From positions 124,001-188,000 of the IMG/VR virus record IMGVR_UViG_3300034158_000023: a stretch of DNA of 64,000 nucleotides; one strand, 5' to 3'. Shown here piece by piece: positions 2,069 through 53,687 of this stretch (within the stretch, counting starts at the first letter, position 1; each line of letters opens with the position of its first letter). Under the pieces are notes generated by a model. It saw nothing but the letters and a program-made list of their open reading frames with translations, ran no database searches and was not told the origin of the DNA. The translations under genes and the position numbers were made by a program.

Positions 2069-2078
2069 TATATATTAC
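2069..2078 (+). promoter_or_regulatory. Putative early (virion RNAP) promoter of chimallin
   Basis: Exact TATATTAC (2071-2078), the published phiKZ early consensus, about 55 nt upstream of the chimallin ATG. Confidence 0.6.
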
Positions 2079-2133
2079 CTATGTGAATCGCTACCATAAT
2101 AAAGCGATTTAGTCGACTATTTAATAAAAGGAA

Positions 2134-3972
2134 ATGCGTAACATGGCTTATAACGAAAAACCACAATCAAATTCTCACGCAACTGGTTACGGCGCACATG
2201 CACCTAAACCAAATGAAACTCCAGTTGGTGGTGGTAAATCTACTGCGCAAATGTTAAGTGGTATCTCTGCACCAATGGCCCACAATGGCAGCGGTGAAGC
2301 TCTTACCACAGTTTATGAAAACATGAAGTTGGTAATGGCTAAAGAAACTCAGCTGGCCAATTTTAAACTTCTGCCAATTGACGGCCAAGCTAATGGCTTG
2401 AACGTTAGTTCTGTTTTGATGTACGCTAAAAATCCACATGTCGATAACTCTTACGTGGTATACACGTTCCTGGTTGGCGCATCTGTTGGTGTCCTGCGTC
2501 CACGTGTCGCGAAGTTCCAAGAAGGTCAATACGACATTCCTGTTGTACTGTCTGACTTGTACGGTCCTACTTTACGTGAAGCCAACTTTGCAATCTTAGC
2601 CACTGCTATCGGTGCTAACGATGAAACTGCGATGACTGATGCGGGCGGTAATGCGTTCCCACGTAGTATGGCTCTGGATGACATGATCAGTTTCCGTACT
2701 TGTATCTATCATGGCGTTTACGCAATGAACAGTATCTTCGTAGACGATGCTGAAGAGCCACAAGTTTACGACCTGACTGACAAAGCAACAAACGTTTATT
2801 TCCATGGCGATCTAGACTTCCGTCCAGGTATTTTACAAAATGGCGCAGGTTCTCCTGTACGTCGTGATGTAACTATTGCAATCACTGCGGTAGATGGTGT
2901 AAACGGGCAAGACGTTGCTGACCAAACTTACGCAACAAGTCACTTACTGTCAAACTGTTCTGCTTATTTTGACATGGTGTTCACTGGTAAGAAACCACCA
3001 GTGCAAGCGTATTATGGCGGCCCAGTTGTAGAACCAACTCAGATGTTCACTCCTAAGTGCTGCATCGTTGACACTACAACAATGGCTGGTGTTACTCCAG
3101 AACTGCAAATCATGACTTTGGCATCAGCTACCAAGCTGTCAAGCGGTCAGTACACTCAGGCTTGGACTAACATGTTCAATCCAGCAGTAGGTGGCGCAAA
3201 CACCATGCATGACATCAGTGCCTTAGGTATTGAGTTAGGCTTCGGTGCTATCGATACCAATGCTCCTGATTGGAACCCACTTGAGTTCTGTAAGTTGTAT
3301 GTTGACGAACAGTTAGTTTACGCTCTACATGTTGAAGACGTGGGCGATTTAAGCTGGATGCACAAAATGCTGAAAGCTGCTGCGGAAAACAACACGCAAT
3401 CACGTCGCGATGATGCTAAAGCATACATCTGGGATGCCGCGGATAACTTGACTGGTAACAAAACTCTTAGCCAGTTTGTGAAGCCAACTGATGCGATCTG
3501 CTACATTGAAGATGACCGTATTTTCTTAGGTCACTACTTTGATAGCACTGGCGCTAAACGCGACCTGCGTGAAATCGATTACCTATATGCGTTAAAGCAT
3601 TTCGGTACCACTGATTTACCAATGGTAGTTGACTTCGGTTCTACGTTCAACCCAGAAACTGGTCCACTGGACTTACGTCTAGGTAAACGTAAACTGTTGA
3701 TCGAAGCTATGGTTTCTCAAAGCATCGTGATCGAAGGTTATGCAACACCACTGATTCTTGATCCAGTGTGGTTGACTGGCGTACAGAAAGCTATCGCAGC
3801 TGTTGGCGGCGAGCCTAAGTTCGAACACCTGTTACAAGGTCAACATACTCAACAACGCGAGTACAGTGCTCTGCGTCAATACGGTATGCAGGCGATTGCT
3901 CCAGTTGCTCAACAGTACGCTGCAAGCGGTTACTACGGCAATGGTTACTACGATCCACGCTTCGCTCGTTAA
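2134..3972 (+). CDS. chmA: Chimallin, major phage-nucleus shell protein (phiKZ gp54-like)
   Basis: 612 aa with highly expressed codon usage and a disordered N-terminus. Extended Gln/Tyr/Gly C-terminal segment. Immediately upstream of the nvRNAP beta' N-subunit, the invariant chmA position. Confidence 0.85.
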   Translation: MRNMAYNEKPQSNSHATGYGAHAPKPNETPVGGGKSTAQMLSGISAPMAHNGSGEALTTVYENMKLVMAKETQLANFKLLPIDGQANGLNVSSVLMYAKNPHVDNSYVVYTFLVGASVGVLRPRVAKFQEGQYDIPVVLSDLYGPTLREANFAILATAIGANDETAMTDAGGNAFPRSMALDDMISFRTCIYHGVYAMNSIFVDDAEEPQVYDLTDKATNVYFHGDLDFRPGILQNGAGSPVRRDVTIAITAVDGVNGQDVADQTYATSHLLSNCSAYFDMVFTGKKPPVQAYYGGPVVEPTQMFTPKCCIVDTTTMAGVTPELQIMTLASATKLSSGQYTQAWTNMFNPAVGGANTMHDISALGIELGFGAIDTNAPDWNPLEFCKLYVDEQLVYALHVEDVGDLSWMHKMLKAAAENNTQSRRDDAKAYIWDAADNLTGNKTLSQFVKPTDAICYIEDDRIFLGHYFDSTGAKRDLREIDYLYALKHFGTTDLPMVVDFGSTFNPETGPLDLRLGKRKLLIEAMVSQSIVIEGYATPLILDPVWLTGVQKAIAAVGGEPKFEHLLQGQHTQQREYSALRQYGMQAIAPVAQQYAASGYYGNGYYDPRFAR

Positions 3973-3986
3973 TTATTAAGTGTTAT

Positions 3987-4022
3987 AAAAAGAAGAGCTT
4001 TCGGGCTCTTCTTTTTTTGCCC
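3987..4022 (+). terminator. Intrinsic terminator after chmA
   Basis: AGAAGAGCT-TTCG-GGCTCTTCT followed by T-tract and GCCC. Confidence 0.85.
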
Positions 4023-4048
4023 AGTACATTACAATAAAAGGAAGCTGT

Positions 4049-5587
4049 ATGATACCAGATTCATATGGAAAAAAGCGGGTAAATCAGATGTTATCGGATT
4101 TATCTTATTTCCTTGAACAGCTAAGAATGTACAGAGAACAAAACTACTCTGGGATTAATCTCGAGTTCGTAGACTTCAGACGCACGTTAGAGTCTATGGA
4201 TCCACCACCGTTAATCTTAAACGATCGACCGCCATGCGTTACTAAAGAAGACCGCGAAGCTTTAGTGAAGTTAATACGTACGGATGTAGAGGGTGATACT
4301 CTTAACATCGTCCCTCGTTGCGGATGTGGTTTTAGATCTGGGGTAGAGTGGAAAAACACTCGATGTCCAGAATGTACAGACTTAGTTACTGCTATCACTG
4401 AACAACCGATTGAGTCACGCGTATGGTTACGCAGCCCTACTGGTGTAGCTCCACTGATAAACCCAACGTTCTGGTTGATCTTAAGCAGAGCGTTTACGAC
4501 ATCTAAGTTCTCTCCGCTAGAGTGGTTAGCTGATCGTAACTATGTAGGTAAGGACGTTAACACAGCTAAGTTTGCAACTGAGTCTCAGCGTTTAATAGAT
4601 GCTGGTTTTCAGCGGGGTTATAATAACCTGTATGAGCATTTCCCTGAGTACATGGGTAAGCTTATGGCTATGGGTTATACTAACCGAGCAGTATCTGAGA
4701 AGTTACGTACACTGTTAGAAAAATATGGGCATTTAGTTTATTCGGAGTATTTACCTTTACCTAATAAACTGGTGTTCCTAACAGAGAAAACTAGTGTACA
4801 CATCTATGCTGATAGTAACATCAAACATGCTTTAGAAGCAGCGGTGATTATTAGCAGTATCGATGAATCAGATCCCAACCTTACCTTACGTGTAAAAGAA
4901 ACTCGTGCTATTAAAGTGGTAACTTGTTTGTCTGGTTATGCTAGCTTACAATTTGCTAAAACGTTAGGCGGGAAACCTGGGTTATTCCGTAAGGAAATCT
5001 TAGGCTCTCGTATGAAGTGGGCTGGACGTTCTGTAATTGCATCTATCTCTGGTGTGCATGATTACGAAGAACTCCATCTGCCGTGGGGATATGCAATTGG
5101 GTTATTTAAGACTCATCTAACTAACAAACTGAAACGACGCGGTTGGTCGTCAGTGGAAATTGATAACTTCCTAGTTAGACACAGTACTAAGTATCACCCA
5201 TTGTTAGACAAGATATTCGTCGAGTTAATTAAAGAAACAGAGTTACCTGGGATACCTTGTATTCTACAACGAAATCCATCGTTGGCTAGAGGTAGTTCGC
5301 AATGCTTCTTTATTACTAAGATTAAGCATGATGTTGCAGACGTTACTATCGGCATGTCGGTATTGACGTTGGTAGCACCTAACGCGGACTTCGATGGCGA
5401 TAGCTTGAATAACTGGATTGTTCTTGATAAGACAATGTATAAGTATATTTCTCGTTTGGCACCACATACAAACGTGTTTGATTTGAATAGTGTAAGAACC
5501 ACGTCTAACACAGCTAAGTTGCAAACACCAACAACGGAAACTATAGCTAACTATATTAGACATGGTGACGCTAGATTTGTACCTTAG
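4049..5587 (+). CDS. Non-virion RNA polymerase beta' N-terminal/catalytic subunit (phiKZ gp55-like), uninterrupted
   Basis: Catalytic NADFDGD motif. Zn finger C-x-C...CPEC. GLFRKEILGSR...GRSVI and LQRNPSL correspond to beta' conserved regions. Confidence 0.92.
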   Translation: MIPDSYGKKRVNQMLSDLSYFLEQLRMYREQNYSGINLEFVDFRRTLESMDPPPLILNDRPPCVTKEDREALVKLIRTDVEGDTLNIVPRCGCGFRSGVEWKNTRCPECTDLVTAITEQPIESRVWLRSPTGVAPLINPTFWLILSRAFTTSKFSPLEWLADRNYVGKDVNTAKFATESQRLIDAGFQRGYNNLYEHFPEYMGKLMAMGYTNRAVSEKLRTLLEKYGHLVYSEYLPLPNKLVFLTEKTSVHIYADSNIKHALEAAVIISSIDESDPNLTLRVKETRAIKVVTCLSGYASLQFAKTLGGKPGLFRKEILGSRMKWAGRSVIASISGVHDYEELHLPWGYAIGLFKTHLTNKLKRRGWSSVEIDNFLVRHSTKYHPLLDKIFVELIKETELPGIPCILQRNPSLARGSSQCFFITKIKHDVADVTIGMSVLTLVAPNADFDGDSLNNWIVLDKTMYKYISRLAPHTNVFDLNSVRTTSNTAKLQTPTTETIANYIRHGDARFVP

Positions 5588-15515: not shown

Positions 15516-15526
15516 TATATATTATC
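15516..15526 (+). promoter_or_regulatory. Putative early promoter of nvRNAP beta operon
   Basis: TATATATTATC, followed by an ACAATAAAAGG leader and ATG at 15554. Confidence 0.55.
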
Positions 15527-15553
15527 ATTTAGTAAGTACTACAATAAAAGGAG

Positions 15554-17647
15554 ATGTCGGTGTCTTATATACAATATAAATACCCAGAACTTACGCAATG
15601 GGTATTGGATATAATAGCAAATTCACCTAACGAACACACCCCTGAAGTTCTAGGGTTAGCCACAGGATTAAATCAATACGCACATTGTAACAGCTCCCCA
15701 CGTATGGTTATGTTGGGATCACATCTATCACAAACACCAGTTATCTATGGTGCTGCTCCTAGACGTATTTATTCCGGTCTGGAAACTAAATACGGGGAAG
15801 GTACTTGGAAGCAGAAGTTAAATGAAGATGCGGTTATTAAGAAAGTAATTCCTAAATACCCAACTGCTGCCAACATGTTTAAATTAAACCCTAGCAGTTA
15901 TGTTATCTATCAAACTAAAGGACAATTAAAAACATTCAACCTGATGCAGTTAGATTTATATCACTCTACGCATCAGTCATTTGGTTATAAGAACGTAATG
16001 GTAAACCACCATCTATTACGGGAAAATCAACCAGTACTAAAAGACACAGTGTTCTCACAAAGTCCTAACATCCGTTTACATGCTGAGTGGGTAATCGGTA
16101 GAGACTTAGTGATTGCAAACATCTCTTTAGATGGGGTAATTGAAGATGGCGTGATTGTCTGTGATGATATCTTAGATGATCTAACCACAGTGCAAGTCGG
16201 TAAACGTAGTGCCTCTAGTGGTAAAGCTTATTACTTGTTAAACACGTATGGCACTAAAACGTTCTTTAAAGGTTTCCCTGATATAGGCGAGCATGTTAGA
16301 GAATGTGGTTTGTTGTTCGCTATGCGTAAGTTTGATTCTGATACAGCTGACATCGATATGGATATTGATAGCATGCAGTATGACGCTGTAGACACAGTAT
16401 TAGACAGATGTGTTTATGCAGTCGCTGGTGCTAAGATTACAGATATTCACATCATGCACTCTCATCTGTATAAAGGTAAGTCGATGAACTGTACTCCAGT
16501 TAACACTGAAGCGCAGATAGTTCGTTACTATGAAGCAGAAGGTAGAGCGTACAAAGCGTTGTTGGATACTGAAGCTGCTTTACGTCGTGAGTTTAAACAC
16601 ATCGAGTTAAGTCCTGGCTTAGAACGTTTGTGTGTAGAAGCTGAAGATTATCATTGGGCACCACATGCTGGGGCGTTAAAACGTACCTATCGTGCTACGC
16701 CGTTAGATGAATGGAATATAGACATCACGTTTGCGCATGACTATAAACCTAACATCGGCAGTAAAATCTCTGGATTACATGGGGATAAATCGGTTATCTG
16801 TGGTATCTGGCCAAGAGCTAACATGCCTACGGATGAATGGGGACGTTCCTCTGATCTCATATCAGCAGGCGGCACAACCATTAACCGGATGAACGTAGGG
16901 CGTTTGATTGAGCAGTATCTAGATGCAAGTGCATGGCATTTTGAAAGACACTTACGTGTATCTAAAGATCCAGAGCGTGACTTTTTAGAGTACTTAGCTT
17001 TAGCTAGTCCTATCTCATACAGCTGGTTGTTAGATTTACCTGAGGAGAAACTGAAAGAACAAGTTGCTCAAGCTCAAGAGTACTTGCGTTATTGTCTACC
17101 TCCTCACAGTCCTAACTTGAATGCCTTATTACCTTACGAGATGCAAAAGAGATTCCCTGTACCTAAGGGACATTTACGATACATCGATCCGCAAGGTAAG
17201 GTTAACATAACCGAAGACAAAATCATGTTGGGCTGTCAACACATAATCGTATCTGAAAAGAACGGTTATGATTGGGCGTCTGTAGCTGATGATGCTAAGT
17301 GTCAAATTTATGGCCCTCCTGCTAAGCTGTCTAATGCTGACAAATATAGTTCTCCTCGTAGACGTCAAACTACAAGGGGTTTAGGAGAAGCTGAATCTCG
17401 CAACCTTAACGCTGTTTGTGGGCCTGTGTTCGCTGCTCGTATCTTAGAGTATCAGAACAACCCGGATGCTGCTAGAGTGATGTCTAGGACGGTACTAACG
17501 CATCCTACACCTACTAACATTGATTGTATTATTAGCGATGCAATAGTGAAGCCTGGATTCTCTAGACCTTCTTTGTTAGCTAACCACATAATCAACGTAG
17601 CTGGTGTGCAGTACAGTACTCGGCGACCACGTAGTGTAGGAGTGTAA
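15554..17647 (+). CDS. nvRNAP beta C-terminal subunit (phiKZ gp71-73-like), uninterrupted
   Basis: IEDGVIV (beta region F/G) and GSKISGLHGDKSVI (GDK...RHGNKG equivalent). RMNVGRLIE and GLGEAE also match beta motifs. Confidence 0.9.
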   Translation: MSVSYIQYKYPELTQWVLDIIANSPNEHTPEVLGLATGLNQYAHCNSSPRMVMLGSHLSQTPVIYGAAPRRIYSGLETKYGEGTWKQKLNEDAVIKKVIPKYPTAANMFKLNPSSYVIYQTKGQLKTFNLMQLDLYHSTHQSFGYKNVMVNHHLLRENQPVLKDTVFSQSPNIRLHAEWVIGRDLVIANISLDGVIEDGVIVCDDILDDLTTVQVGKRSASSGKAYYLLNTYGTKTFFKGFPDIGEHVRECGLLFAMRKFDSDTADIDMDIDSMQYDAVDTVLDRCVYAVAGAKITDIHIMHSHLYKGKSMNCTPVNTEAQIVRYYEAEGRAYKALLDTEAALRREFKHIELSPGLERLCVEAEDYHWAPHAGALKRTYRATPLDEWNIDITFAHDYKPNIGSKISGLHGDKSVICGIWPRANMPTDEWGRSSDLISAGGTTINRMNVGRLIEQYLDASAWHFERHLRVSKDPERDFLEYLALASPISYSWLLDLPEEKLKEQVAQAQEYLRYCLPPHSPNLNALLPYEMQKRFPVPKGHLRYIDPQGKVNITEDKIMLGCQHIIVSEKNGYDWASVADDAKCQIYGPPAKLSNADKYSSPRRRQTTRGLGEAESRNLNAVCGPVFAARILEYQNNPDAARVMSRTVLTHPTPTNIDCIISDAIVKPGFSRPSLLANHIINVAGVQYSTRRPRSVGV

Positions 17648-17650
17648 GAT

Positions 17651-19660
17651 ATGGAAGTATTGTTAGCCCGTGATGTCGCAAATATGTCCGAACATGACAT
17701 TTGGACTATATTACCACCTAGATTCATTATGCGGTTTGATGATGGAGATATGGTGGTAGATGATCGACGCACTCAAATGTGTTACTACCTGTGGTGGCCA
17801 CTACGAGATTATCCTGATACCAAGATCTATAAATACCATCACATGGGTGCTGCTGGTTGGACATCTAAGTCAGTTTTGGAACTGAACGATGCAATGTGGT
17901 GGGATTGTTTTGATCAACACGGTAAATCCATCAACCCTGAATTAGGGGCGATGCGTAGTAAGCAGGAGATTAACCGTTTACACAACAGCGTATCTGTTAA
18001 CTTAGGTGCGCATGTGGCCAGTTTAGATATTCTGGATTTTGCTGAAGTAATGATGCATCCAGAGATCAAAGCTATTAACGATCATCTGCAATCGTTAGAT
18101 CAAACGGATTTAAGTGTACTGGTAATGATGGATGTTGAGATTGCTAAAGCTCACGCTGAAGTAACTCGCATTATGATGACCTGTCCTACACTTAAAGACA
18201 ACCGATTAGTTTGTGCTGTGCGTGCTAAGACGTCAGACATAAACCCAGTGTTGCAGATTATCTGTTGTCGTGGTAAGCCTACAGACATCGATAGTACAGT
18301 TTTCACTACTGCTATCGTGCGTGGGTTAGGTCATGGGTTATTCTCTCTTTACGATGTGTTAGCGGAGTCTAGAACTGCTGCTAAGGCACTAGAGTTACAG
18401 AAAGATCCATTAGCTGATACTGAGTACTTTAACCGTCAGATGCAATTGATCTGTGCTACCTTAGCGCATTTAGATGCTTACTGGCAACGCAACGTGGAAG
18501 GTCCTTATGAACTCCACGATTGTGGCACCAAACGTTATATCACTTGGCAAGTAGATAAACAAAACTTCCAAGATTTAGTGGGTAGTTACCGCGTAGATGA
18601 AAACGATCAATTGCACGTTATCCGTAAGGATGATGTACATCTGATTGGTACAGTGATTCAAATACGTAATGGTTTAACTTGTGCACATAAAGAAGAGAAC
18701 CATATATGCGCCGCTTGTTATGGCGAGTTGGAATTCTCTTTACCTGCTGGAACCAACGTAGCACACTTTGCATGTATTGTACTGTGCGCTATTATCTCGC
18801 AGAAAGTGTTATCAGTTAAGCATAACGAAACCTCTGCAACTGTAGCTGGTGCCGAAGTCCCTAGAGAGTATAGAAGACAATTACGTGCGTTGGGTAACTC
18901 TTATGGGTTCTCATTGGACTTAGATTTAAGTACGTCATGCTTGGCGATTAACAAAGATGATGTGCCTAGATTAAGTGATATCTATGAGACTAAGAACATC
19001 CATGATCTCCCCCTACGCAAAATAGGGACTATGCAGGATGTCACCATCATATCGGAAATACCAGGGTTGGGACTAACGTCGTCGTACGTACCAGTACGCT
19101 CAGGAACTACAGGAAGTAGTTTCACTTATGAATTCTTAGAATACATAAAAGCTACTGGGTTTGAGGTTGAACGTGAGACAATCATAATCAACCTTAAAGA
19201 TTGGGATATCATGAAACCAGTGTGGGAAATGTCGCGTAAGCACGCTAACATGCTGGACTTTATGGAAGCTATTAAGAAACTAGTTAAAGTTAGTGATGAC
19301 GATAAAACTACTAAACTCACCATGGACTTGGATGAGGAAGGTAACGTCTCTTTAGCGTTAAGTGGTTTCTATGATTTAGTTAGATCTAAGTTCCCATTTA
19401 ACCTTTCTTTATTAGGGGTTATAATGCGGTCTACTCTAGTAGTAGATAAAGAGCTAGGTGATTATCGAATCCCATGTGGAGATCAGATTGGTCAATTCGA
19501 ACAATTTGGTAAGACCATGGAAAAACGTTCGTTAGGTGGTGGTCTAGCCAACGAACGACATGAGGGGATATTTGTTAACCCTGATTCGTATATACTAACT
19601 GAACGTGGTGGACATCCTTTAGACGAAACTATACAACCAACTATGTCTTATTTCCCTTAG
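17651..19660 (+). CDS. nvRNAP beta' C-terminal subunit (phiKZ gp74-like)
   Basis: SRTAAKAL...LADTEYFNR (bridge-helix equivalent). Zn ligands CGT...C...ICAACYG. ISQKVLSVKH matches the trigger loop. Confidence 0.88.
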   Translation: MEVLLARDVANMSEHDIWTILPPRFIMRFDDGDMVVDDRRTQMCYYLWWPLRDYPDTKIYKYHHMGAAGWTSKSVLELNDAMWWDCFDQHGKSINPELGAMRSKQEINRLHNSVSVNLGAHVASLDILDFAEVMMHPEIKAINDHLQSLDQTDLSVLVMMDVEIAKAHAEVTRIMMTCPTLKDNRLVCAVRAKTSDINPVLQIICCRGKPTDIDSTVFTTAIVRGLGHGLFSLYDVLAESRTAAKALELQKDPLADTEYFNRQMQLICATLAHLDAYWQRNVEGPYELHDCGTKRYITWQVDKQNFQDLVGSYRVDENDQLHVIRKDDVHLIGTVIQIRNGLTCAHKEENHICAACYGELEFSLPAGTNVAHFACIVLCAIISQKVLSVKHNETSATVAGAEVPREYRRQLRALGNSYGFSLDLDLSTSCLAINKDDVPRLSDIYETKNIHDLPLRKIGTMQDVTIISEIPGLGLTSSYVPVRSGTTGSSFTYEFLEYIKATGFEVERETIIINLKDWDIMKPVWEMSRKHANMLDFMEAIKKLVKVSDDDKTTKLTMDLDEEGNVSLALSGFYDLVRSKFPFNLSLLGVIMRSTLVVDKELGDYRIPCGDQIGQFEQFGKTMEKRSLGGGLANERHEGIFVNPDSYILTERGGHPLDETIQPTMSYFP

Positions 19661-23368: not shown

Positions 23369-23809
23369 TTATAAACAAATGTGTATTTTATTTTTAATGG
23401 ACTCTAGGTATTTATAGAGTAGTGGTTTTACTTCAGTTGGGTAATCTAAACCACCGTTACCACAACCTAAAGGAGGGATAGCTATATCGCAGTCTCCTAA
23501 CTTATCAAGATTGTCAACTAACTTAGTACAGATAGTTTCAACCCATTCTAACTTAGAACCATTAGACCAATGGTCTTTTGTTGCAACCAATAAAATAAGC
23601 TCCTTAGAGGTAATGTAATAAGGTAGTATACTTCCAGGTTTCATTATACCTAGGCGACACTTCTCTTTATAGTTGCGTAAGATACTTGGGTATCTTTTTT
23701 TCGCTTCTAATGCTATCCCTTTACCCATGACGCCTACACAGTTAACTGTTACCAGTTTAATAGGCGCTGGATGTTCGAATATATTACTTACCCCTTCGGA
23801 AACTATCAT
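23369..23809 (-). CDS. Macrodomain ADP-ribosylhydrolase, DarG-like
   Basis: VNCVGVMGKGIAL, ATKDHW (DarG PTKxHW with catalytic Lys) and IAIPPLGCGNGGLD. Confidence 0.88.
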   Translation of the reverse strand: MIVSEGVSNIFEHPAPIKLVTVNCVGVMGKGIALEAKKRYPSILRNYKEKCRLGIMKPGSILPYYITSKELILLVATKDHWSNGSKLEWVETICTKLVDNLDKLGDCDIAIPPLGCGNGGLDYPTEVKPLLYKYLESIKNKIHICL

Positions 23810-26320: not shown

Positions 26321-27166
26321 ATGTCTCAGAAATTCCTAACTTGGGCAACACTTTCGCTAGGTCCTGTTAAAGCTACACAATTACACGATAGTTTTGAATT
26401 AGCGTCTTTAGTATTAGAAGATGATGTTTGGGAGGTTGCTGAACAACCGTACTTCAGAAGCAATATCGATAGTCCAGGTGAGTTACAGACTTGGATCCAG
26501 AGTCAAGCTTACATGTACATCGTCAGAGCTTGTCAGGCGTTCGGTGTAACGATAGATGAATCTGTCGGTATAGAAGCTATAGGCAACATCAATAGCATCT
26601 TACGTACGCTTATAGAGCTTACTGGTGACTTCCAACTACCTGAAGAGGTTATCTCATTAGAAGATATGGATTGCTCTGATTCTGAGAAGTTGACTAAGAT
26701 GGTTACCATCGTAGAAACATGGGTAGAGGAAGAAGATGTCCTAGGACTAATCTCTGATATGAGTTTGAAGGTAATTCCTCGTATCCTCAACAACTGTAAG
26801 TCGTTAATGCCTCCAGAGACGGATGAGATTGATGAACCAGTAACTCCTAAATACTTAGCTCAAGTTAGTGCTTTGATTAAAAGCCTTGAGCGCTCTTCTA
26901 TGGTGTCTGAATACTTCAGTGAGGGCAATGCCTTAGGTTATAGCTTAGCGCAGTATATGACTGTGTTTGGGGGCTTCCTGGCTACCTTGGAAGAACCTAA
27001 AGAGTTAGCTATCAACTTGATGTTAGTTTTGTATTACACTGAGGACTTATCTGAACCTCAGCAGAAAGACCTGTTACGTATCTTAGATAAAATTGTCCCA
27101 GACATCCACTTAGCTGCTGATGTAGGGGTTATGTTAACGCGGATGTTTAAGGAACTGTCACTATGA
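26321..27166 (+). CDS. Conserved acidic protein (phiKZ gp79-like) co-transcribed with vRNAP subunit
   Basis: 281 aa with GGAG SD and ATGA overlap with the RNAP subunit gene. Confidence 0.55.
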   Translation: MSQKFLTWATLSLGPVKATQLHDSFELASLVLEDDVWEVAEQPYFRSNIDSPGELQTWIQSQAYMYIVRACQAFGVTIDESVGIEAIGNINSILRTLIELTGDFQLPEEVISLEDMDCSDSEKLTKMVTIVETWVEEEDVLGLISDMSLKVIPRILNNCKSLMPPETDEIDEPVTPKYLAQVSALIKSLERSSMVSEYFSEGNALGYSLAQYMTVFGGFLATLEEPKELAINLMLVLYYTEDLSEPQQKDLLRILDKIVPDIHLAADVGVMLTRMFKELSL

Positions 27167-28455
27167 CGCCGTTTACGTATTTACTAGAAGCTATTAACGC
27201 TGGAGCTCATTTAAGATCAGAATGGGTAACTAGAGCGTTCTGTGTTTCTAACATCGGTAATGAGATTACTGATGAGTCTTACGACTACCAGTTGTTGAAC
27301 GTCGATGGAGTTTATGGTTTTGTAAAAGGGGCTGAAGTTATAGTAATCCCTGACACTGATGTCACTAAACCACTACTGCACAAAAACGCACCGATTGAAC
27401 TTAAGAAAGGTTGGTTACCTAACGTAAACCAAGACGTTATTACTTTGGTGGGTAACGTGATAGCAAACGCTATTATGTTCATCTATCCGTTTGAACACAA
27501 GTTCCCTTTCTTACTAGGTAAGTTTAACTTAGGTAAGATTGAAAAGCAGATCATCCAAAACCTTTATGATGATGTTGGAGAAGGGGAGTCAGAAGAGGCT
27601 GATAAGTTCTACGTACGTGAGCTGGTTAAGTTCATCGATGCTACAGTTTCTCTAACTGGCTTTAACGACCTGTTTGTGCCTGGTGCTACCGAGTATACCT
27701 TAGGACCTGCTCCAAAGGCTCTAGCACGCATGAAGGAGCTTCTAGCGGAACATAAAGATCATCTAGACGATCCTGTTGTAATTGCCGACATTCAGAAGGA
27801 GATCGAAGTTCTAGATAGAGAGTACATAGCAAGCGATCCAGATGCTGGATTCTATTTTAAAGATAAATCCTTTAAAGTAGTCCGTATGAAAATGTACTAC
27901 ATGTACGGTATCGAGAAGAACTTTGCTAACGATGGCACTTATACGTTTATCGAGAAGCCTCTCAACGATGGATGGGATCTATCTAAATTACCGGAGATGT
28001 CTAACACAGCACGTGATGGTTCGTTTAAGCGTGGTGCTGAAACTGCATTAGCTGGTGAGAAGGTTAAGATAGCTTTCCGTGCAATGACTGGTGTAGTTGT
28101 AAACGTTGAGGACTGTGGTAGCATGGTAGGGGAACCTATTCACATGTACTCTGACAAATACCTTAACTTTGTAGGTAGCACCTTTATCATAAACGGTAAG
28201 CTAGTGAAGGTAGATGAGTCTAACGTAGAGTCTTTCAAAGATCAAACGATGTTAGTGAGATCTCCTACTACCTGTAACGTGATCGATGGTAACCTCTGCG
28301 TTGTGTGCGTTGGTGATTTCATTAGGTCTCGTGAGAACACTCTAGGAGCTAGGGTAGCTGAGATCCCATCTACGATGATGGGACTCTCCATGGGTGCTAT
28401 GCATGGTAAGGCTTTGAAGACTGTGCAGATAGATATAGCTAGAGCGTTAACATAA
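27163..28455 (+). CDS. Virion RNA polymerase beta' middle subunit (phiKZ gp80-like)
   Basis: RGAETALAGEKVK (bridge helix), Zn ligands DCGS...C...LCVVCVG, and MMGLSMGAMH (trigger loop). Confidence 0.85.
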   Translation: MTPFTYLLEAINAGAHLRSEWVTRAFCVSNIGNEITDESYDYQLLNVDGVYGFVKGAEVIVIPDTDVTKPLLHKNAPIELKKGWLPNVNQDVITLVGNVIANAIMFIYPFEHKFPFLLGKFNLGKIEKQIIQNLYDDVGEGESEEADKFYVRELVKFIDATVSLTGFNDLFVPGATEYTLGPAPKALARMKELLAEHKDHLDDPVVIADIQKEIEVLDREYIASDPDAGFYFKDKSFKVVRMKMYYMYGIEKNFANDGTYTFIEKPLNDGWDLSKLPEMSNTARDGSFKRGAETALAGEKVKIAFRAMTGVVVNVEDCGSMVGEPIHMYSDKYLNFVGSTFIINGKLVKVDESNVESFKDQTMLVRSPTTCNVIDGNLCVVCVGDFIRSRENTLGARVAEIPSTMMGLSMGAMHGKALKTVQIDIARALT

Positions 28456-28458
28456 TCA

Positions 28459-28487
28459 GGGGAGGGGTAAAACCCTCCCTTATGCCC
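28459..28487 (+). terminator. Hairpin terminator followed by TATGCCC
   Basis: GGGGAGGG-GTAAAA-CCCTCCCT then TATGCCC. Confidence 0.7.
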
Positions 28488-28499
28488 AGTTAAATGGAG

Positions 28500-28511
28500 A
28501 TATATATCATC
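28500..28511 (+). promoter_or_regulatory. Putative early promoter ATATATATCATC
   Basis: Variant of the ATATATYATC motif at 10064, 15517, 30577 and 58957. Confidence 0.5.
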
Positions 28512-28714
28512 TATTTGTAACAAGCCGACATATAATACTTAAGACAAATCTTATTTTATTACACCTATCTTATTATATGTTTAAACGCCCTTGACGTTGC
28601 TCTGCACGCCCCTGGCGTCTATGCTGTTTATATATATAAGGAAATCTAAGAAAGTATAAGAAACACGTATAAACAGCATACACAGGAGAGGGTACAAAGC
28701 CCTCTCCGTATGCC
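28512..28714 (+). ncRNA. Candidate structured non-coding RNA (or DNA cis element)
   Basis: No credible + strand ORF. Three inverted-repeat stems (10, 5 and 13 bp) between a promoter motif and a terminator hairpin. Confidence 0.4.
28685..28714 (+). terminator. Hairpin terminator followed by GTATGCC
   Basis: GGAGAGGG-TACAAAG-CCCTCTCC then GTATGCC. Confidence 0.7.
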
Positions 28715-28740
28715 TATATAAAACCATAAAAGGAAAACCA

Positions 28741-29190
28741 ATGAGTAAACGTAAAGCTAAAGCTAAAAGCAAACCTGAGGTAACTGATCACTCCAGGATC
28801 TTAGAAACTATCCTAGGAGATAAACTCCACTGGTTACACAGAGGAATGGCAAAGCAAACCTTAGAAGATGCAGCAGGAGATCCTATCTATCGATACAGCC
28901 TATACAGAGGCAACGTAGTGATAGACTTCTACCCATCTACACCAGAAGCTATCACCTTGAGAGATACTATCCCATTCGCAGCTGATATGGCTATCTTACT
29001 AAAGAATCAACTTTGTATCAACACAGTTGATAACTTCCGTAATACATTGCTAGACGTATGCTTACATAAAGCTAAAAGCCGTAAGTTACACATAGAAGGT
29101 TTTGTTAAACAGGTTTATTACTCCATGCAGATAAACCCTGAGCTATTTGCAACCAACGCATTTACAACTAACACATTTGAAGGTAAGTAA
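28741..29190 (+). CDS. Hypothetical protein with basic N-terminus
   Basis: 149 aa with an ATAAAAGG leader. Confidence 0.6.
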   Translation: MSKRKAKAKSKPEVTDHSRILETILGDKLHWLHRGMAKQTLEDAAGDPIYRYSLYRGNVVIDFYPSTPEAITLRDTIPFAADMAILLKNQLCINTVDNFRNTLLDVCLHKAKSRKLHIEGFVKQVYYSMQINPELFATNAFTTNTFEGK

Positions 29191-32177: not shown

Positions 32178-32217
32178 GGCATAAAGGGAGAGTGTAAGCT
32201 CTCCCTTATTTTTTTTT
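32178..32217. terminator. Bidirectional terminator
   Basis: AAGGGAGAG-TGTAAG-CTCTCCCTT plus T-tract on +. TTTATGCC follows on -. Confidence 0.8.
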
Positions 32218-38284: not shown

Positions 38285-38315
38285 AGAGGAGCTCCTAGGA
38301 GCTCCTCTATGCCGT
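38285..38315. terminator. Perfect 24-bp palindrome between convergent genes, followed by ATGCCG
   Basis: AGAGGAGCTCCTAGGAGCTCCTCT. Same 20-bp core as 821-840. Confidence 0.75.
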
Positions 38316-53402: not shown

Positions 53403-53409
53403 CATAAAC

Positions 53410-53440
53410 TGGGAGGACTGCTAGTCCTCCCATTATGCCG
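53410..53440 (+). terminator. Hairpin terminator followed by TTATGCCG
   Basis: TGGGAGGACT-GCT-AGTCCTCCCA then TTATGCCG. Confidence 0.75.
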
Positions 53441-53526
53441 TGACTGGAAAACTTTCTAAATATATATTGTTTTAGTAGTAAGAAAGCATAAAGCTTTCTA
53501 TTCATAAAACAATAAAGGGTATTACC

Positions 53527-53616
53527 ATGAACAAATTCGAAAAGTTTGTTGAGCGCAACCAAGAAGTTCTACTGTTAATCTCTGCCGTGATTGGGTTGAT
53601 GTACAAATATATTTAG
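53527..53616 (+). CDS. Unannotated 29-aa small membrane-type peptide MNKFEKFVERNQEVLLLISAVIGLMYKYI
   Basis: ACAATAAAGGG leader, upstream ATATATATTG promoter-like motif, and downstream hairpin. Confidence 0.5.
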   Translation: MNKFEKFVERNQEVLLLISAVIGLMYKYI

Positions 53617-53628
53617 TTTAATTATATG

Positions 53629-53657
53629 GGAGGTAGTGCACTTAAGTGCGCACCTCC
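53629..53657 (+). terminator. Hairpin after small ORF
   Basis: GGAGGT-A-GTGCAC-TTAA-GTGCGC-ACCTCC. TTTTTTGCCG lies shortly downstream. Confidence 0.6.
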
Positions 53658-53687
53658 TAAACCTATATTTTTTGCCGGAGGTGTAAA

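What the first reader, a model, noticed from the sequence alone, without database searches (positions are those of the whole stretch)
28500..28714. ORF-free, multi-stem ~200-nt unit with its own promoter and terminator: candidate phage ncRNA or cis element
Seen: the unit lies between the vRNAP-subunit terminator and a second terminator. A promoter-like ATATATATCATC is followed by three inverted repeats: ACATATAATA/TATTATATGT (28528-28537 with 28571-28580, enclosing a TAAGA-CAAA-TCTTA mini-hairpin), ACGCC-CCT-GGCGT (28606-28618), and a perfect 13-bp TATGCTGTTTATA/TATAAACAGCATA (28620-28632 with 28668-28680). The terminator hairpin at 28685-28707 closes it. The longest + ORF is 12 aa without an SD. 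This is the longest intergenic stretch in an otherwise tightly packed window. Inference: a structured early sRNA (host-protein decoy, antisense regulator or nucleus-associated RNA), or an AT-rich cruciform origin or packaging site.
Basis: partly seen in the sequence, partly recalled or inferred. Interest (0 to 1): 0.75.

Follow-up and report, generated by a model that had tools for sequence, protein, structure and literature searches.

The report
ORF-free early leader cassette, jumbo phage
A 285-base gene-free gap in a nucleus-forming jumbo phage holds a genuine phage early promoter, then a conserved regulatory cassette (three copies in the genome) and phage-type terminators, so it probably makes a short early RNA of the kind already mapped in phage phiKZ; its function is unknown.

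Summary
Window 28456-28740 has no conserved ORF. All the reported inverted repeats are exact, and the stretch folds better than shuffles.

Genome-wide motif surveys explain most parts:
- The "ATATATATCATC" box is one of about 24 phiKZ-type early (virion-RNAP) promoters in this 215-kb genome. It is the only one not followed by SD+ATG within about 85 nt.
- The GC hairpins followed by T(T)ATGC belong to the terminator class mapped experimentally in phiKZ and 201phi2-1 (hairpin + YTTATKYYGT).
- The "perfect 13-bp repeat" is two terminator tails in opposite orientation.

The predicted product is an RNA of about 195 nt (perhaps also about 110 nt). This matches the known class of "5'UTR-derived sRNA candidates made by premature termination" in giant phages.

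Two points are new:
- The 3' two-thirds (28557-28735) is one of three paralogous ~180-nt intergenic cassettes in the genome, all inside early operons.
- The gap is as conserved as the neighbouring RNAP gene in near relatives. One relative keeps the cassette but has lost the promoter.

No transcript data could be obtained. An origin or packaging role has no support. Verdict: new member of a known kind, moderate interest.

The parts
28460..28489 (+). T1: terminator of the upstream RNAP-subunit gene. GC hairpin 28460-28479 (dG -17.1) plus tail TTATGCCCAG.
   Evidence: It has the same hairpin+tail type as dozens of sites genome-wide. It matches the phiKZ terminator motif hairpin+YTTATKYYGT (PMC10914365). 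The stem covaries in relatives.
28478..28521 (+). Early (virion-RNAP type) promoter. The -10 box TATATATCATC lies at 28501-28511, with a weaker CCA -30 block at 28487-28489 and a TTG at 28515-17 where the family has GTG. The inferred TSS is about 28515-28519.
   Evidence: The box is invariant in 9 of 10 relatives. A PWM built from 18 other promoters scores it 22.5 bits; family members score 20.5-42.9 and the best background site 11.8. Family members precede chimallin and RNAP beta genes. The consensus equals the phiKZ/201phi2-1 TATATTAC..GTG (PMC7058600). The TSS position is inferred from PMC7598289 and is not mapped.
28528..28580 (+). A hairpin occurs at this place in most relatives, but support is weak.
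   Evidence: z is only -1.5 to -2. No covariation was seen. RNAalifold prefers pairing the 3' arm with 28631-28653 instead.
28557..28735 (+). Paralogous intergenic cassette. It is one of three copies in the genome; the others are at genome 17445-17626 and 83886-84074.
   Evidence: nhmmer profiles match in both directions, E 1e-8 to 5e-11. Alignments are A5 and A8.
28590..28605 (+). Conserved linear block CTTGACG..GCTCT(GC), shared by the three paralogs and the relatives.
28606..28629 (+). T2: 5-bp GC mini-hairpin (28606-28618, dG -6.0) plus terminator-type tail CTATGCTGTTT. A 21-nt stretch (28616-28636) is identical at genome 17528-17548.
   Evidence: The stem is kept by compensatory changes: ACGCC/GGCGT, ACGAC/GTCGT, CTAG/CTAG, AGCC/GGCT (read by eye).
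28668..28680 (+). 3' arm of the 13-bp inverted repeat. It is the reverse complement of the terminator-tail consensus, i.e. the minus-strand tail of T3, and it overlaps the extended base of T3.
   Evidence: One search lists the minus-strand hit at genome 152680. The same arrangement occurs at other terminators, e.g. genome 61193 and 17026. The arm is absent from paralogs 2 and 3 and from L002.
28676..28714 (+). T3: strong terminator. The core hairpin is 28685-28707 (dG -17.6). It is extended by GCATAC/GTATGC to dG -24.1 and followed by the tail GTATGCC.
   Evidence: Both the core and the extension covary, with G-U pairs valid only on the + strand. 201phi2-1 has comparable elongated terminators combining motifs A and B (PMC11512511).
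28725..28743 (+). The phage's consensus SD (CATAAAAGGA) and the ATG of the downstream fast-evolving 149-aa gene (28741-29190).

Best explanation
The gap is a cis-regulatory leader of an early operon in a phiKZ-like, nucleus-forming jumbo phage.

How it is built and should work:
1. After terminator T1 closes the RNAP-subunit gene, a genuine but below-average early promoter (box 28501-11) starts transcription near 28517. The polymerase is presumably the injected virion RNAP.
2. In every other early unit of this genome the promoter runs into an SD+ATG after about 45 nt. Here the polymerase first crosses a conserved ~180-nt cassette.
3. The cassette consists of AU-rich blocks, a GCTCT block and a covarying 4-5-bp GC mini-hairpin with a terminator-type tail (T2, weak). 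A strong extended terminator (T3) follows, 29 nt before the ATG.
4. Most transcripts should therefore stop at T3, giving a ~195-nt ORF-free early RNA, and perhaps some at T2 (~110 nt). Read-through, or re-initiation at the TATG in T3's tail, would express the downstream genes.

This is the same arrangement that ONT-cappable-seq and Northern blots showed in phiKZ and 201phi2-1 as '5'UTR-derived sRNA candidates made by premature termination'.

Shown here: membership of the promoter and terminator motif families, absence of an ORF, conservation, and paralogy.
Inferred: the transcript ends, the termination efficiencies, and any function of the RNA or of the read-through control.
For: Host phage type:
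- The genome is a 215-kb phage with chimallin and split RNAP genes.

Promoter:
- About 24 sites in the genome score at least 20 bits, all on the + strand and nearly all intergenic.
- The finding's site scores 22.5 bits against a best background of 11.8.
- Its box is invariant across relatives down to 47% protein identity.
- All other intergenic copies are followed by SD+ATG within 30-85 nt. This one is 239 nt away.

Terminators:
- The hairpin + T(A/T)TGC(C/T)GT signal is strongly intergenic: 18 of 25 TATGCCGT copies lie in the 8% of the genome that is intergenic.
- The signal occurs on both strands at convergent gene junctions, so it acts as a terminator.
- It equals the phiKZ motif found at mapped 3' ends (PMC10914365).
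- Stabilities are T1 -17.1, T2 -6.0 and T3 -17.6/-24.1 kcal/mol.

No gene:
- No ORF is conserved. Rfam and tRNA scans are negative.

Selection:
- DNA identity of the gap, the RNAP gene and the downstream gene is 0.90/0.86/0.73 in L001 and 0.82/0.78/0.33 in L006.
- The syntenic ORF-free gap (240-500 nt) exists only in the clade with at least 46% identity.
- The 47% clade shows the same layout with different sequence: early box, ~300 nt of strongly structured RNA (z -6.2), then two canonical terminators.

Cassette:
- Three paralogs lie inside early operons.
- Locus 2 is about 95% identical in a relative whose downstream protein is only 49% identical.

Precedent:
- 17 phiKZ and 8 201phi2-1 short RNAs arise by termination just after a TSS, and two phiKZ examples were confirmed by Northern blot.
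Against: - No transcript evidence exists. The only public runs holding this phage are environmental metagenomes with fragmentary contigs. A 419-nt contig over the gap in one 'RNA' library starts at the same place as a DNA-library contig.
- The promoter is near the bottom of its family, with weak -30 and -20 blocks.
- One relative (61% identity, L217) has lost the promoter but keeps the cassette. Paralogs 2 and 3 have no promoter of their own. The short promoter-to-T3 RNA therefore cannot be the only selected product.
- T2's stem is very weak for a terminator.
- No robust consensus fold exists. The RNAalifold covariation term is +1.14 and the family-wide alignment keeps only the terminator.
- The tail TATG also matches the phiKZ late-promoter core, so the roles of the hairpin+tail signals may be mixed.
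Confidence: 0.55

Rival explanations
1. It is a stand-alone trans-acting early sRNA gene. The ~195-nt RNA itself is the selected product and acts on host or phage targets by base-pairing or protein binding. The downstream gene is served by other signals.
For: - The unit has its own promoter and its own terminator, with no ORF.
- Its conservation is at or above that of the RNAP gene.
- 13 nt (28668-28680) are perfectly complementary to the T2-type tail at paralog locus 2.
- Conserved sRNAs are reported in giant phages (PMC11512511).
Against: - The promoter is lost in L217 while the rest is kept.
- Two paralogs lack a promoter and sit in 3'UTR/leader positions.
- The complementary 13-mer is missing from L002 and from the paralogs, and it equals a generic terminator tail.
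- No covariation-supported fold exists outside the terminators.
- No other promoter for the downstream gene was found.
Confidence: 0.17
2. The cassette is a conditional-termination or antitermination signal, working like lambda nut. The GCTCT block plus mini-hairpin, transcribed upstream of a strong terminator, would load a phage factor onto the phage polymerase so that delayed-early genes behind T3 are read only later. The three copies would mark three such switch points.
For: - Three paralogous copies exist, each inside an early-promoter operon and each just upstream of a strong terminator and the next gene.
- A linear block is conserved next to a small covarying hairpin.
- The cassette is retained without the promoter in L217.
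- Two modes of read-through were seen at 5'UTR terminators in phiKZ, and antitermination was suggested for 201phi2-1.
Against: - This is purely architectural. No factor is known.
- Only GCTCT resembles boxA.
- The hairpin is followed by the ordinary terminator tail, so it may simply be a weak terminator.
- No expression data exist.
Confidence: 0.13
3. It is a DNA-level element such as a replication origin, a packaging site or a protein-binding cruciform.
For: - The region is AT-rich with several inverted repeats that fold well on both strands.
- Three copies per genome could be binding sites.
Against: - GC skew shows no change here.
- All recognisable signals are directional transcription signals on the + strand.
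- The conserved stems tolerate G-U pairs, which would be A-C mismatches on the other strand or in a cruciform.
- The long inverted repeat is not conserved in L002 or in the paralogs.
Confidence: 0.05
4. It has no dedicated function. It would be a pile-up of ordinary promoter and terminator modules, or a decaying small gene, spread by recombination between similar intergenic cassettes.
For: - Every recognisable piece is a generic genome-wide motif.
- The 13-bp repeat follows from the tail consensus.
- Similar promoter-plus-stem-loop cassettes are known as recombination substrates in T4-type phages (own knowledge, not checked here).
Against: - The non-generic blocks (28557-28605 and 28630-28655) are conserved across relatives and paralogs.
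- The gap evolves more slowly than the flanking genes.
- Locus 2 is 95% conserved next to a 49%-identical gene.
- No ORF remnant shares a frame between copies (and reading).
Confidence: 0.1

Closest known systems
5'UTR-derived sRNA/ncRNA candidates made by premature termination in giant phages. Examples in phiKZ are the 71 nt RNA upstream of PHIKZ221, the 141 nt RNA upstream of PHIKZ302 and the 196 nt 5'UTR_gp40. 201phi2-1 has sRNAs including sRNA005.
   Same: - An early or other phage promoter is followed within 250 nt by a phage-type terminator, with no SD-preceded ORF.
- The unit lies just upstream of a gene.
- The sequence is conserved among relatives and the function is unknown (PMC10914365, PMC11512511).
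   Different: - There is no sequence similarity. The phiKZ PHIKZ302 and PHIKZ297 leaders look unrelated.
- The conserved giant-phage sRNA upstream of phiKZ gp182 sits in a 55-nt gap in a different genomic context.
- Transcripts are not demonstrated here.
- Here the leader is a three-copy paralogous cassette, which has not been reported for the phiKZ cases as far as the papers read show.
phiKZ-type intrinsic terminators (GC hairpin + YTTATKYYGT), and the elongated motif A/B terminators of 201phi2-1.
   Same: - T1, T2 and T3 are hairpins followed by T(T)ATGC(C/T).
- T3 has the elongated base.
- The class is genome-wide and also marks convergent junctions.
   Different: - The tails of T1 and T3 deviate after TATGCC (CA and TA in place of GT).
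- T2 has only 5 bp.
phiKZ/201phi2-1 early (vRNAP) promoters, TATATTAC...GTG.
   Same: - The same -10 box.
- The same three-block layout at -10, -20 and -30.
- The same placement upstream of chimallin and RNAP genes.
   Different: - This copy has TCAT in place of TTAC and TTG in place of GTG.
- Its upstream blocks are weak.
- Use by a virion RNAP is inferred by analogy.
Lambda nut sites (boxA + boxB hairpin upstream of tR1/tL1).
   Same: The resemblance is in how it might work only: a short linear block plus a small hairpin, transcribed between an early promoter and a terminator, in more than one copy per genome.
   Different: - The boxA and boxB consensus sequences are not present.
- Host Nus factors are not expected to serve phage multisubunit RNAPs.
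- No N-like factor has been identified.
This is a lead recalled from general knowledge, not a tested membership.

Membership tests
phiKZ-type early promoter | AT-rich ~10-nt box TATATTAC-like, centred near -10. | tested here: met
   TATATATCATC lies at 28501-28511. The pattern occurs 3 times in the window against 0.18 expected and 14 times in the genome, all on the + strand.
phiKZ-type early promoter | Conserved -20 and -30 blocks and the downstream GTG, scored as a whole motif. | tested here: met
   The leave-out PWM scores it 22.5 bits. Family members score 20.5-42.9 and the best non-family site 11.8. This copy is at the weak end of the family.
phiKZ-type early promoter | Transcription starts here early in infection, by the virion RNAP. 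| not testable with these tools
   No infection RNA-seq exists for this phage.
phiKZ-type intrinsic terminator | GC-rich hairpin followed by YTTATKYYGT. | tested here: met
   - T1: hairpin + TTATGCCCAG.
- T2: hairpin + CTATGCTGT.
- T3: hairpin + GTATGCCTA.
(motif.) The last two tail positions deviate in T1 and T3.
phiKZ-type intrinsic terminator | RNA 3' ends map to the tail. | not testable with these tools
   No usable RNA data exist.
5'UTR-derived sRNA candidate (premature termination) | A terminator lies within 250 nt downstream of a promoter, upstream of the gene's SD. | tested here: met
   The box ends at 28511. The T2 tail is at 28620 and the T3 tail at 28709. The SD is at 28730. This rests on sequence signals only.
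5'UTR-derived sRNA candidate (premature termination) | No ORF of 10 aa or more preceded by an SD. | tested here: met
   The longest + ORF is 22 aa, TTG-started and without SD. None is conserved.
5'UTR-derived sRNA candidate (premature termination) | An abundant short transcript sharing its 5' end with the long mRNA. | not testable with these tools
   Only environmental contigs are available.
Any Rfam family / tRNA / tmRNA | A covariance-model or ARAGORN match. | tested here: not met
   There are 0 matches at gathering score in the window. The best sub-threshold hit has E 0.057 and covers only the T1 hairpin. ARAGORN finds 0 genes.
- An alternative long-range helix shows 8 double changes against 3.1 expected, but the +2 slide control is nearly as good.
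- Only the terminators survive in the family-wide alignment.
- Few lineages are available: 5-6.
Replication origin / packaging site | A strand-composition switch, iterons or terminal-repeat features. | tested here: not met
   Cumulative GC skew rises smoothly through 28-29 kb. The only repeats found are transcription-signal motifs. There is no direct test of replication or packaging.
Lambda-type nut site | boxA consensus plus a boxB hairpin bound by N. | not tested
   By eye, only GCTCT resembles boxA. The consensus is recalled from memory and no tool was applied.

The most novel reading that the evidence does not exclude
The three paralogous cassettes (window 28557-28735; genome 17445-17626 and 83886-84074) are RNA signals that control termination by the phage's own multisubunit RNA polymerases. 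They would be a nut-like timing switch that separates immediate-early from delayed-early genes in a nucleus-forming jumbo phage, with the short early RNA as its visible by-product.
Probability: 0.12. Interest if true: 0.75.

Novelty: new member of a known kind. Interest (0 to 1): 0.4.

Why it matters
Temporal control in nucleus-forming jumbo phages is poorly understood. Their two RNA polymerases use no host factors. Dozens of short promoter-proximal RNAs have been mapped in phiKZ and 201phi2-1, but none has a known function.

This locus shows that the same arrangement exists in a distant, uncultured lineage, where the closest RNAP subunit among deposited phages is under 38% identical. The arrangement is under purifying selection. 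Its core is a repeated cassette that can persist without its promoter.

That gives a compact, comparative handle for asking whether these leaders regulate termination. The handle consists of three paralogs, a covarying mini-hairpin and a natural promoter-loss variant. If the leaders only mark ordinary promoter-terminator junctions, the finding is routine annotation.

Tried and rejected
- **Rfam** at gathering and at E up to 10, and **ARAGORN**: nothing.
- **blastn of the locus against deposited phages**: no match. The nearest RNAP subunit there is under 38% identical.
- **IMG/VR** by protein and by three DNA patterns: no relatives, only chance hits.
- **JGI metagenome scan**: only distant phages (43% identity or less), with no gap after the gene.
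- **Public sequencing runs**: only peat, wastewater and freshwater metagenomes. The laid contigs are short and uninformative about transcription, and the contig start at 28460 is shared by a DNA library.
- **Sigma-70 promoter**: none in the gap, and the region has fewer consensus hits than shuffles. TTGACG at 28591 has no -10 at a workable spacing (read).
- **Small proteins**: not conserved, and the frames differ between paralogs.
- **Late-promoter reading of hairpin+TATG**: judged secondary, because the signal also sits at convergent gene ends on both strands.
- **Concerted evolution of the two 21-nt-identical copies**: rejected. In the L001 phage, locus 2 keeps the sequence while locus 1 differs.
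- **Paralogy of the genes downstream of the cassettes**: none.
- **Synteny with the conserved giant-phage sRNA upstream of phiKZ gp182**: different context.
- **Family-wide consensus fold**: not obtained.

Full report
**What the window is.** The window is bases 124001-188000 of a single 215,386-bp contig with 41% GC. It encodes a nuclear-shell protein (chimallin, window 2134-3972) and several split RNA-polymerase beta/beta' pieces. It is therefore a phiKZ-like, nucleus-forming jumbo phage. The lineage is distant: the best match of the 430-aa RNAP subunit (27163-28455) among deposited phages is under 38% identical. The locus has no DNA match there or in IMG/VR.

**The observation.**
- The 285-nt gap 28456-28740 has no ORF with a ribosome-binding site. 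The longest + ORF is 22 aa with a TTG start, and nothing is conserved on either strand.
- The stretch 28516-28716 folds with z = -4.25, but its complement folds with z = -5.44. The repeats are real, but energy does not tell the strand.
- Rfam and ARAGORN find nothing.
- The other 285-nt gap in the window (53403-53687) contains a 29-aa ORF with a good SD. The finding is therefore the longest truly ORF-free stretch in the window.

**The promoter.**
- The box TATATAT(C/T)A(C/T)C occurs 14 times in the genome. All copies are on the + strand and nearly all are intergenic.
- With looser matching, about 24 sites share a 44-nt motif of the form T.TC.AA...TA..TATATATTA.C.T.GTG.
- This is the phiKZ/201phi2-1 early-promoter consensus TATATTAC...GTG (PMC7058600). 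Such early promoters have conserved blocks near -10, -20 and -30 (PMC7598289 and PMC11512511).
- Copies precede chimallin and RNAP beta genes, as expected for early genes.
- A PWM built without the finding's site scores it 22.5 bits. Other family members score 20.5-42.9 and the best background site scores 11.8.
- The box is invariant in relatives down to 47% RNAP identity.
- Every other intergenic copy is followed by the phage's SD (ATAAAAGGA) and a start codon within 30-85 nt. Here the distance is 239 nt.

**The terminators.**
- A survey of GC hairpins shows that dozens are followed by T(T)ATGCCGT or TTTTTGCCGT.
- TATGCCGT is concentrated in the 8% of the genome that is intergenic: 18 of 25 copies.
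- The signal occurs on both strands at convergent gene ends, for example window 38285-38308 and 32184-32207. It therefore belongs to terminators rather than, or not only to, TATG late promoters.
- This is the motif reported at mapped 3' ends in phiKZ, hairpin + YTTATKYYGT (PMC10914365), and again in 201phi2-1. There, an added upstream motif lengthens the stem (PMC11512511).
- The gap holds three such signals:

| Signal | Hairpin | dG (kcal/mol) | Note |
|---|---|---|---|
| T1 | 28460-28479 | -17.1 | closes the RNAP-subunit gene |
| T2 | 28606-28618 | -6.0 | tail CTATGCTGT |
| T3 | 28685-28707 | -17.6 | -24.1 with the GCATAC/GTATGC extension |

Several other terminators have this symmetric arrangement.
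- That repeat is reduced to 8-11 bp in relatives. It is absent in L002 and in the paralogs.

**Relatives.** A protein search in public assemblies found RNAP-subunit relatives at 92, 85, 74, 66, 62, 61 and 45-48% identity. Their contigs were fetched.
- The ORF-free gap is syntenic and 240-500 nt long in most relatives of at least 46% identity; a 45% relative (L216) has an 82-nt gap and a GIY-YIG-type gene there instead. More distant phages have almost no gap.
- In near relatives the gap is as conserved as the RNAP gene and much more conserved than the downstream gene. DNA identities for gap, RNAP gene and downstream gene are 0.90/0.86/0.73 in L001 and 0.82/0.78/0.33 in L006.
- The downstream gene is homologous throughout but evolves fast.
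- The 47% clade (L009-L011) has the same layout with unrelated sequence. It has the early box, about 300 nt of strongly structured ORF-free RNA (z = -6.2), then two canonical terminators before the gene.
- One 61% relative (L217) lacks the promoter box entirely but keeps the downstream blocks.

**A repeated cassette.**
- A 21-nt stretch (28616-28636) is identical at genome 17528-17548.
- Profile searches show that window 28557-28735 is paralogous to two other intergenic elements, genome 17445-17626 and 83886-84074. The searches hit reciprocally.
- All three lie inside operons headed by an early box, between a stop codon and the next SD+ATG.
- Shared blocks, in order:
  - an AU-rich TCTAT..TAT block;
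  - CTTG.AG;
  - GCTCT;
  - a 4-5-bp GC mini-hairpin whose stem differs by compensatory changes (ACGCC/GGCGT, ACGAC/GTCGT, CTAG/CTAG, and AGCC/GGCT in L005);
  - a terminator-type tail;
  - ATATATAAAG;
  - a strong terminator with an extended base.
- Locus 2 is about 95% identical in the L001 phage, although the protein that follows it is only 49% identical.
- The genes flanking the three copies are not paralogous.

**Structure.**
- RNAalifold's own consensus instead pairs 28565-28580 with 28631-28653 around T2. This gives 91% of cells paired and 8 pairs with double changes against 3.1 expected (1 of 500 shuffles).
- However, a +2 slide scores almost as well because of the TA repeats, and the structure was derived from the same alignment.
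- Across the nine-sequence family alignment only the terminator and its extension are kept. Their G-U pairs are valid only on the + strand RNA.
- The solid structural elements are therefore the terminators and the mini-hairpin. The rest is conserved mainly as primary sequence.

**Transcription evidence.** None could be obtained. Runs containing the phage are peat (probably the source), wastewater, freshwater and similar metagenomes. The laid contigs are 150-420 nt at low depth. The one longer contig over the gap in an 'RNA' library begins at 28460, exactly where a DNA-library contig begins, which is probably an assembly break at the hairpin.

**Interpretation.**
- The best-supported reading (about 0.55) is a cis-regulatory leader of an early operon. 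A modest early promoter runs into a conserved cassette that ends in a strong terminator just before the gene.
- An RNA of about 195 nt (perhaps also about 110 nt) should accumulate early. Downstream genes would depend on read-through or on initiation at the tail TATG.
- This is the arrangement described as premature termination in 5'UTRs, which gives sRNA candidates in phiKZ (17 cases, two confirmed by Northern blot) and 201phi2-1 (8 cases). None has a known function. There is no sequence relationship to the phiKZ examples inspected.
- The promoter-less paralogs and the promoter-less relative argue that the cassette itself is the selected unit, rather than a stand-alone sRNA gene.
- Whether the cassette tunes termination (a nut-like switch), stabilises or marks the RNA, or binds a protein cannot be decided here.
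- An origin or packaging role has no support.

**Verdict.** The finding is a real, conserved, ORF-free early unit. It is a new member of a known kind, and the three-copy cassette is a modestly new twist.

Noticed in passing
window 53403-53687 (also genome 112647 and 214436): A variant early promoter (PWM 22.6 bits, box at window 53462) is followed by a conserved hairpin AGAAAGC-ATAAA-GCTTTCT, an SD and a 29-aa ORF (53527-53616, hydrophobic C-terminus). The promoter+hairpin block occurs three times in the genome.
   Followed up: partly
L011:3033-3042 versus L009:4960-4969 and L010: These contigs from one study are nearly identical, but differ by four clustered transitions in 10 nt of the 3' arm of the first hairpin after the early promoter (TAACATATGT to TAGTGTGTGT). 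All four would keep pairing as G-U on the + strand RNA, yet the wobble helix is no longer the predicted optimum.
   Followed up: partly
whole genome, e.g. window 38285-38308 and 32184-32207: Terminators at convergent gene ends, and many at tandem junctions, are symmetric. The hairpin is flanked by the reverse-complemented tail on one side and the tail on the other (ACGGCATA-hairpin-TATGCCGT), which lengthens the stem. This looks like the motif A/B combination described for 201phi2-1.
   Followed up: partly
window 2069-5587 and 15516-19660: Early boxes precede chimallin (2134-3972), followed by an RNAP beta piece (4049-5587), and precede two further RNAP beta pieces (15554-17647, 17651-19660). 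These are probably the non-virion polymerase. The 430-aa subunit next to the finding has no early box, which fits a virion-polymerase subunit.
   Followed up: partly
genome 84074-85012 (outside the window; L214:2075-3013): The gene behind paralogous cassette 3 matches a QueC-like queuosine-biosynthesis family (phrog_1550, E 4e-17).
   Followed up: no
L216:2501-5438: In a 45% relative (211-kb contig) the orthologous RNAP subunit is 556 aa. It is followed by a 394-aa gene with a faint GIY-YIG hit instead of the ORF-free gap, possibly a homing-endonuclease insertion.
   Followed up: no
window 23369-23809 (-), by orthology to L001:1199-1639 and L003:1032-1469: The orthologous 145-146-aa proteins in relatives carry a Macro domain hit (PF01661). 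The window's own copy was not scanned.
   Followed up: no
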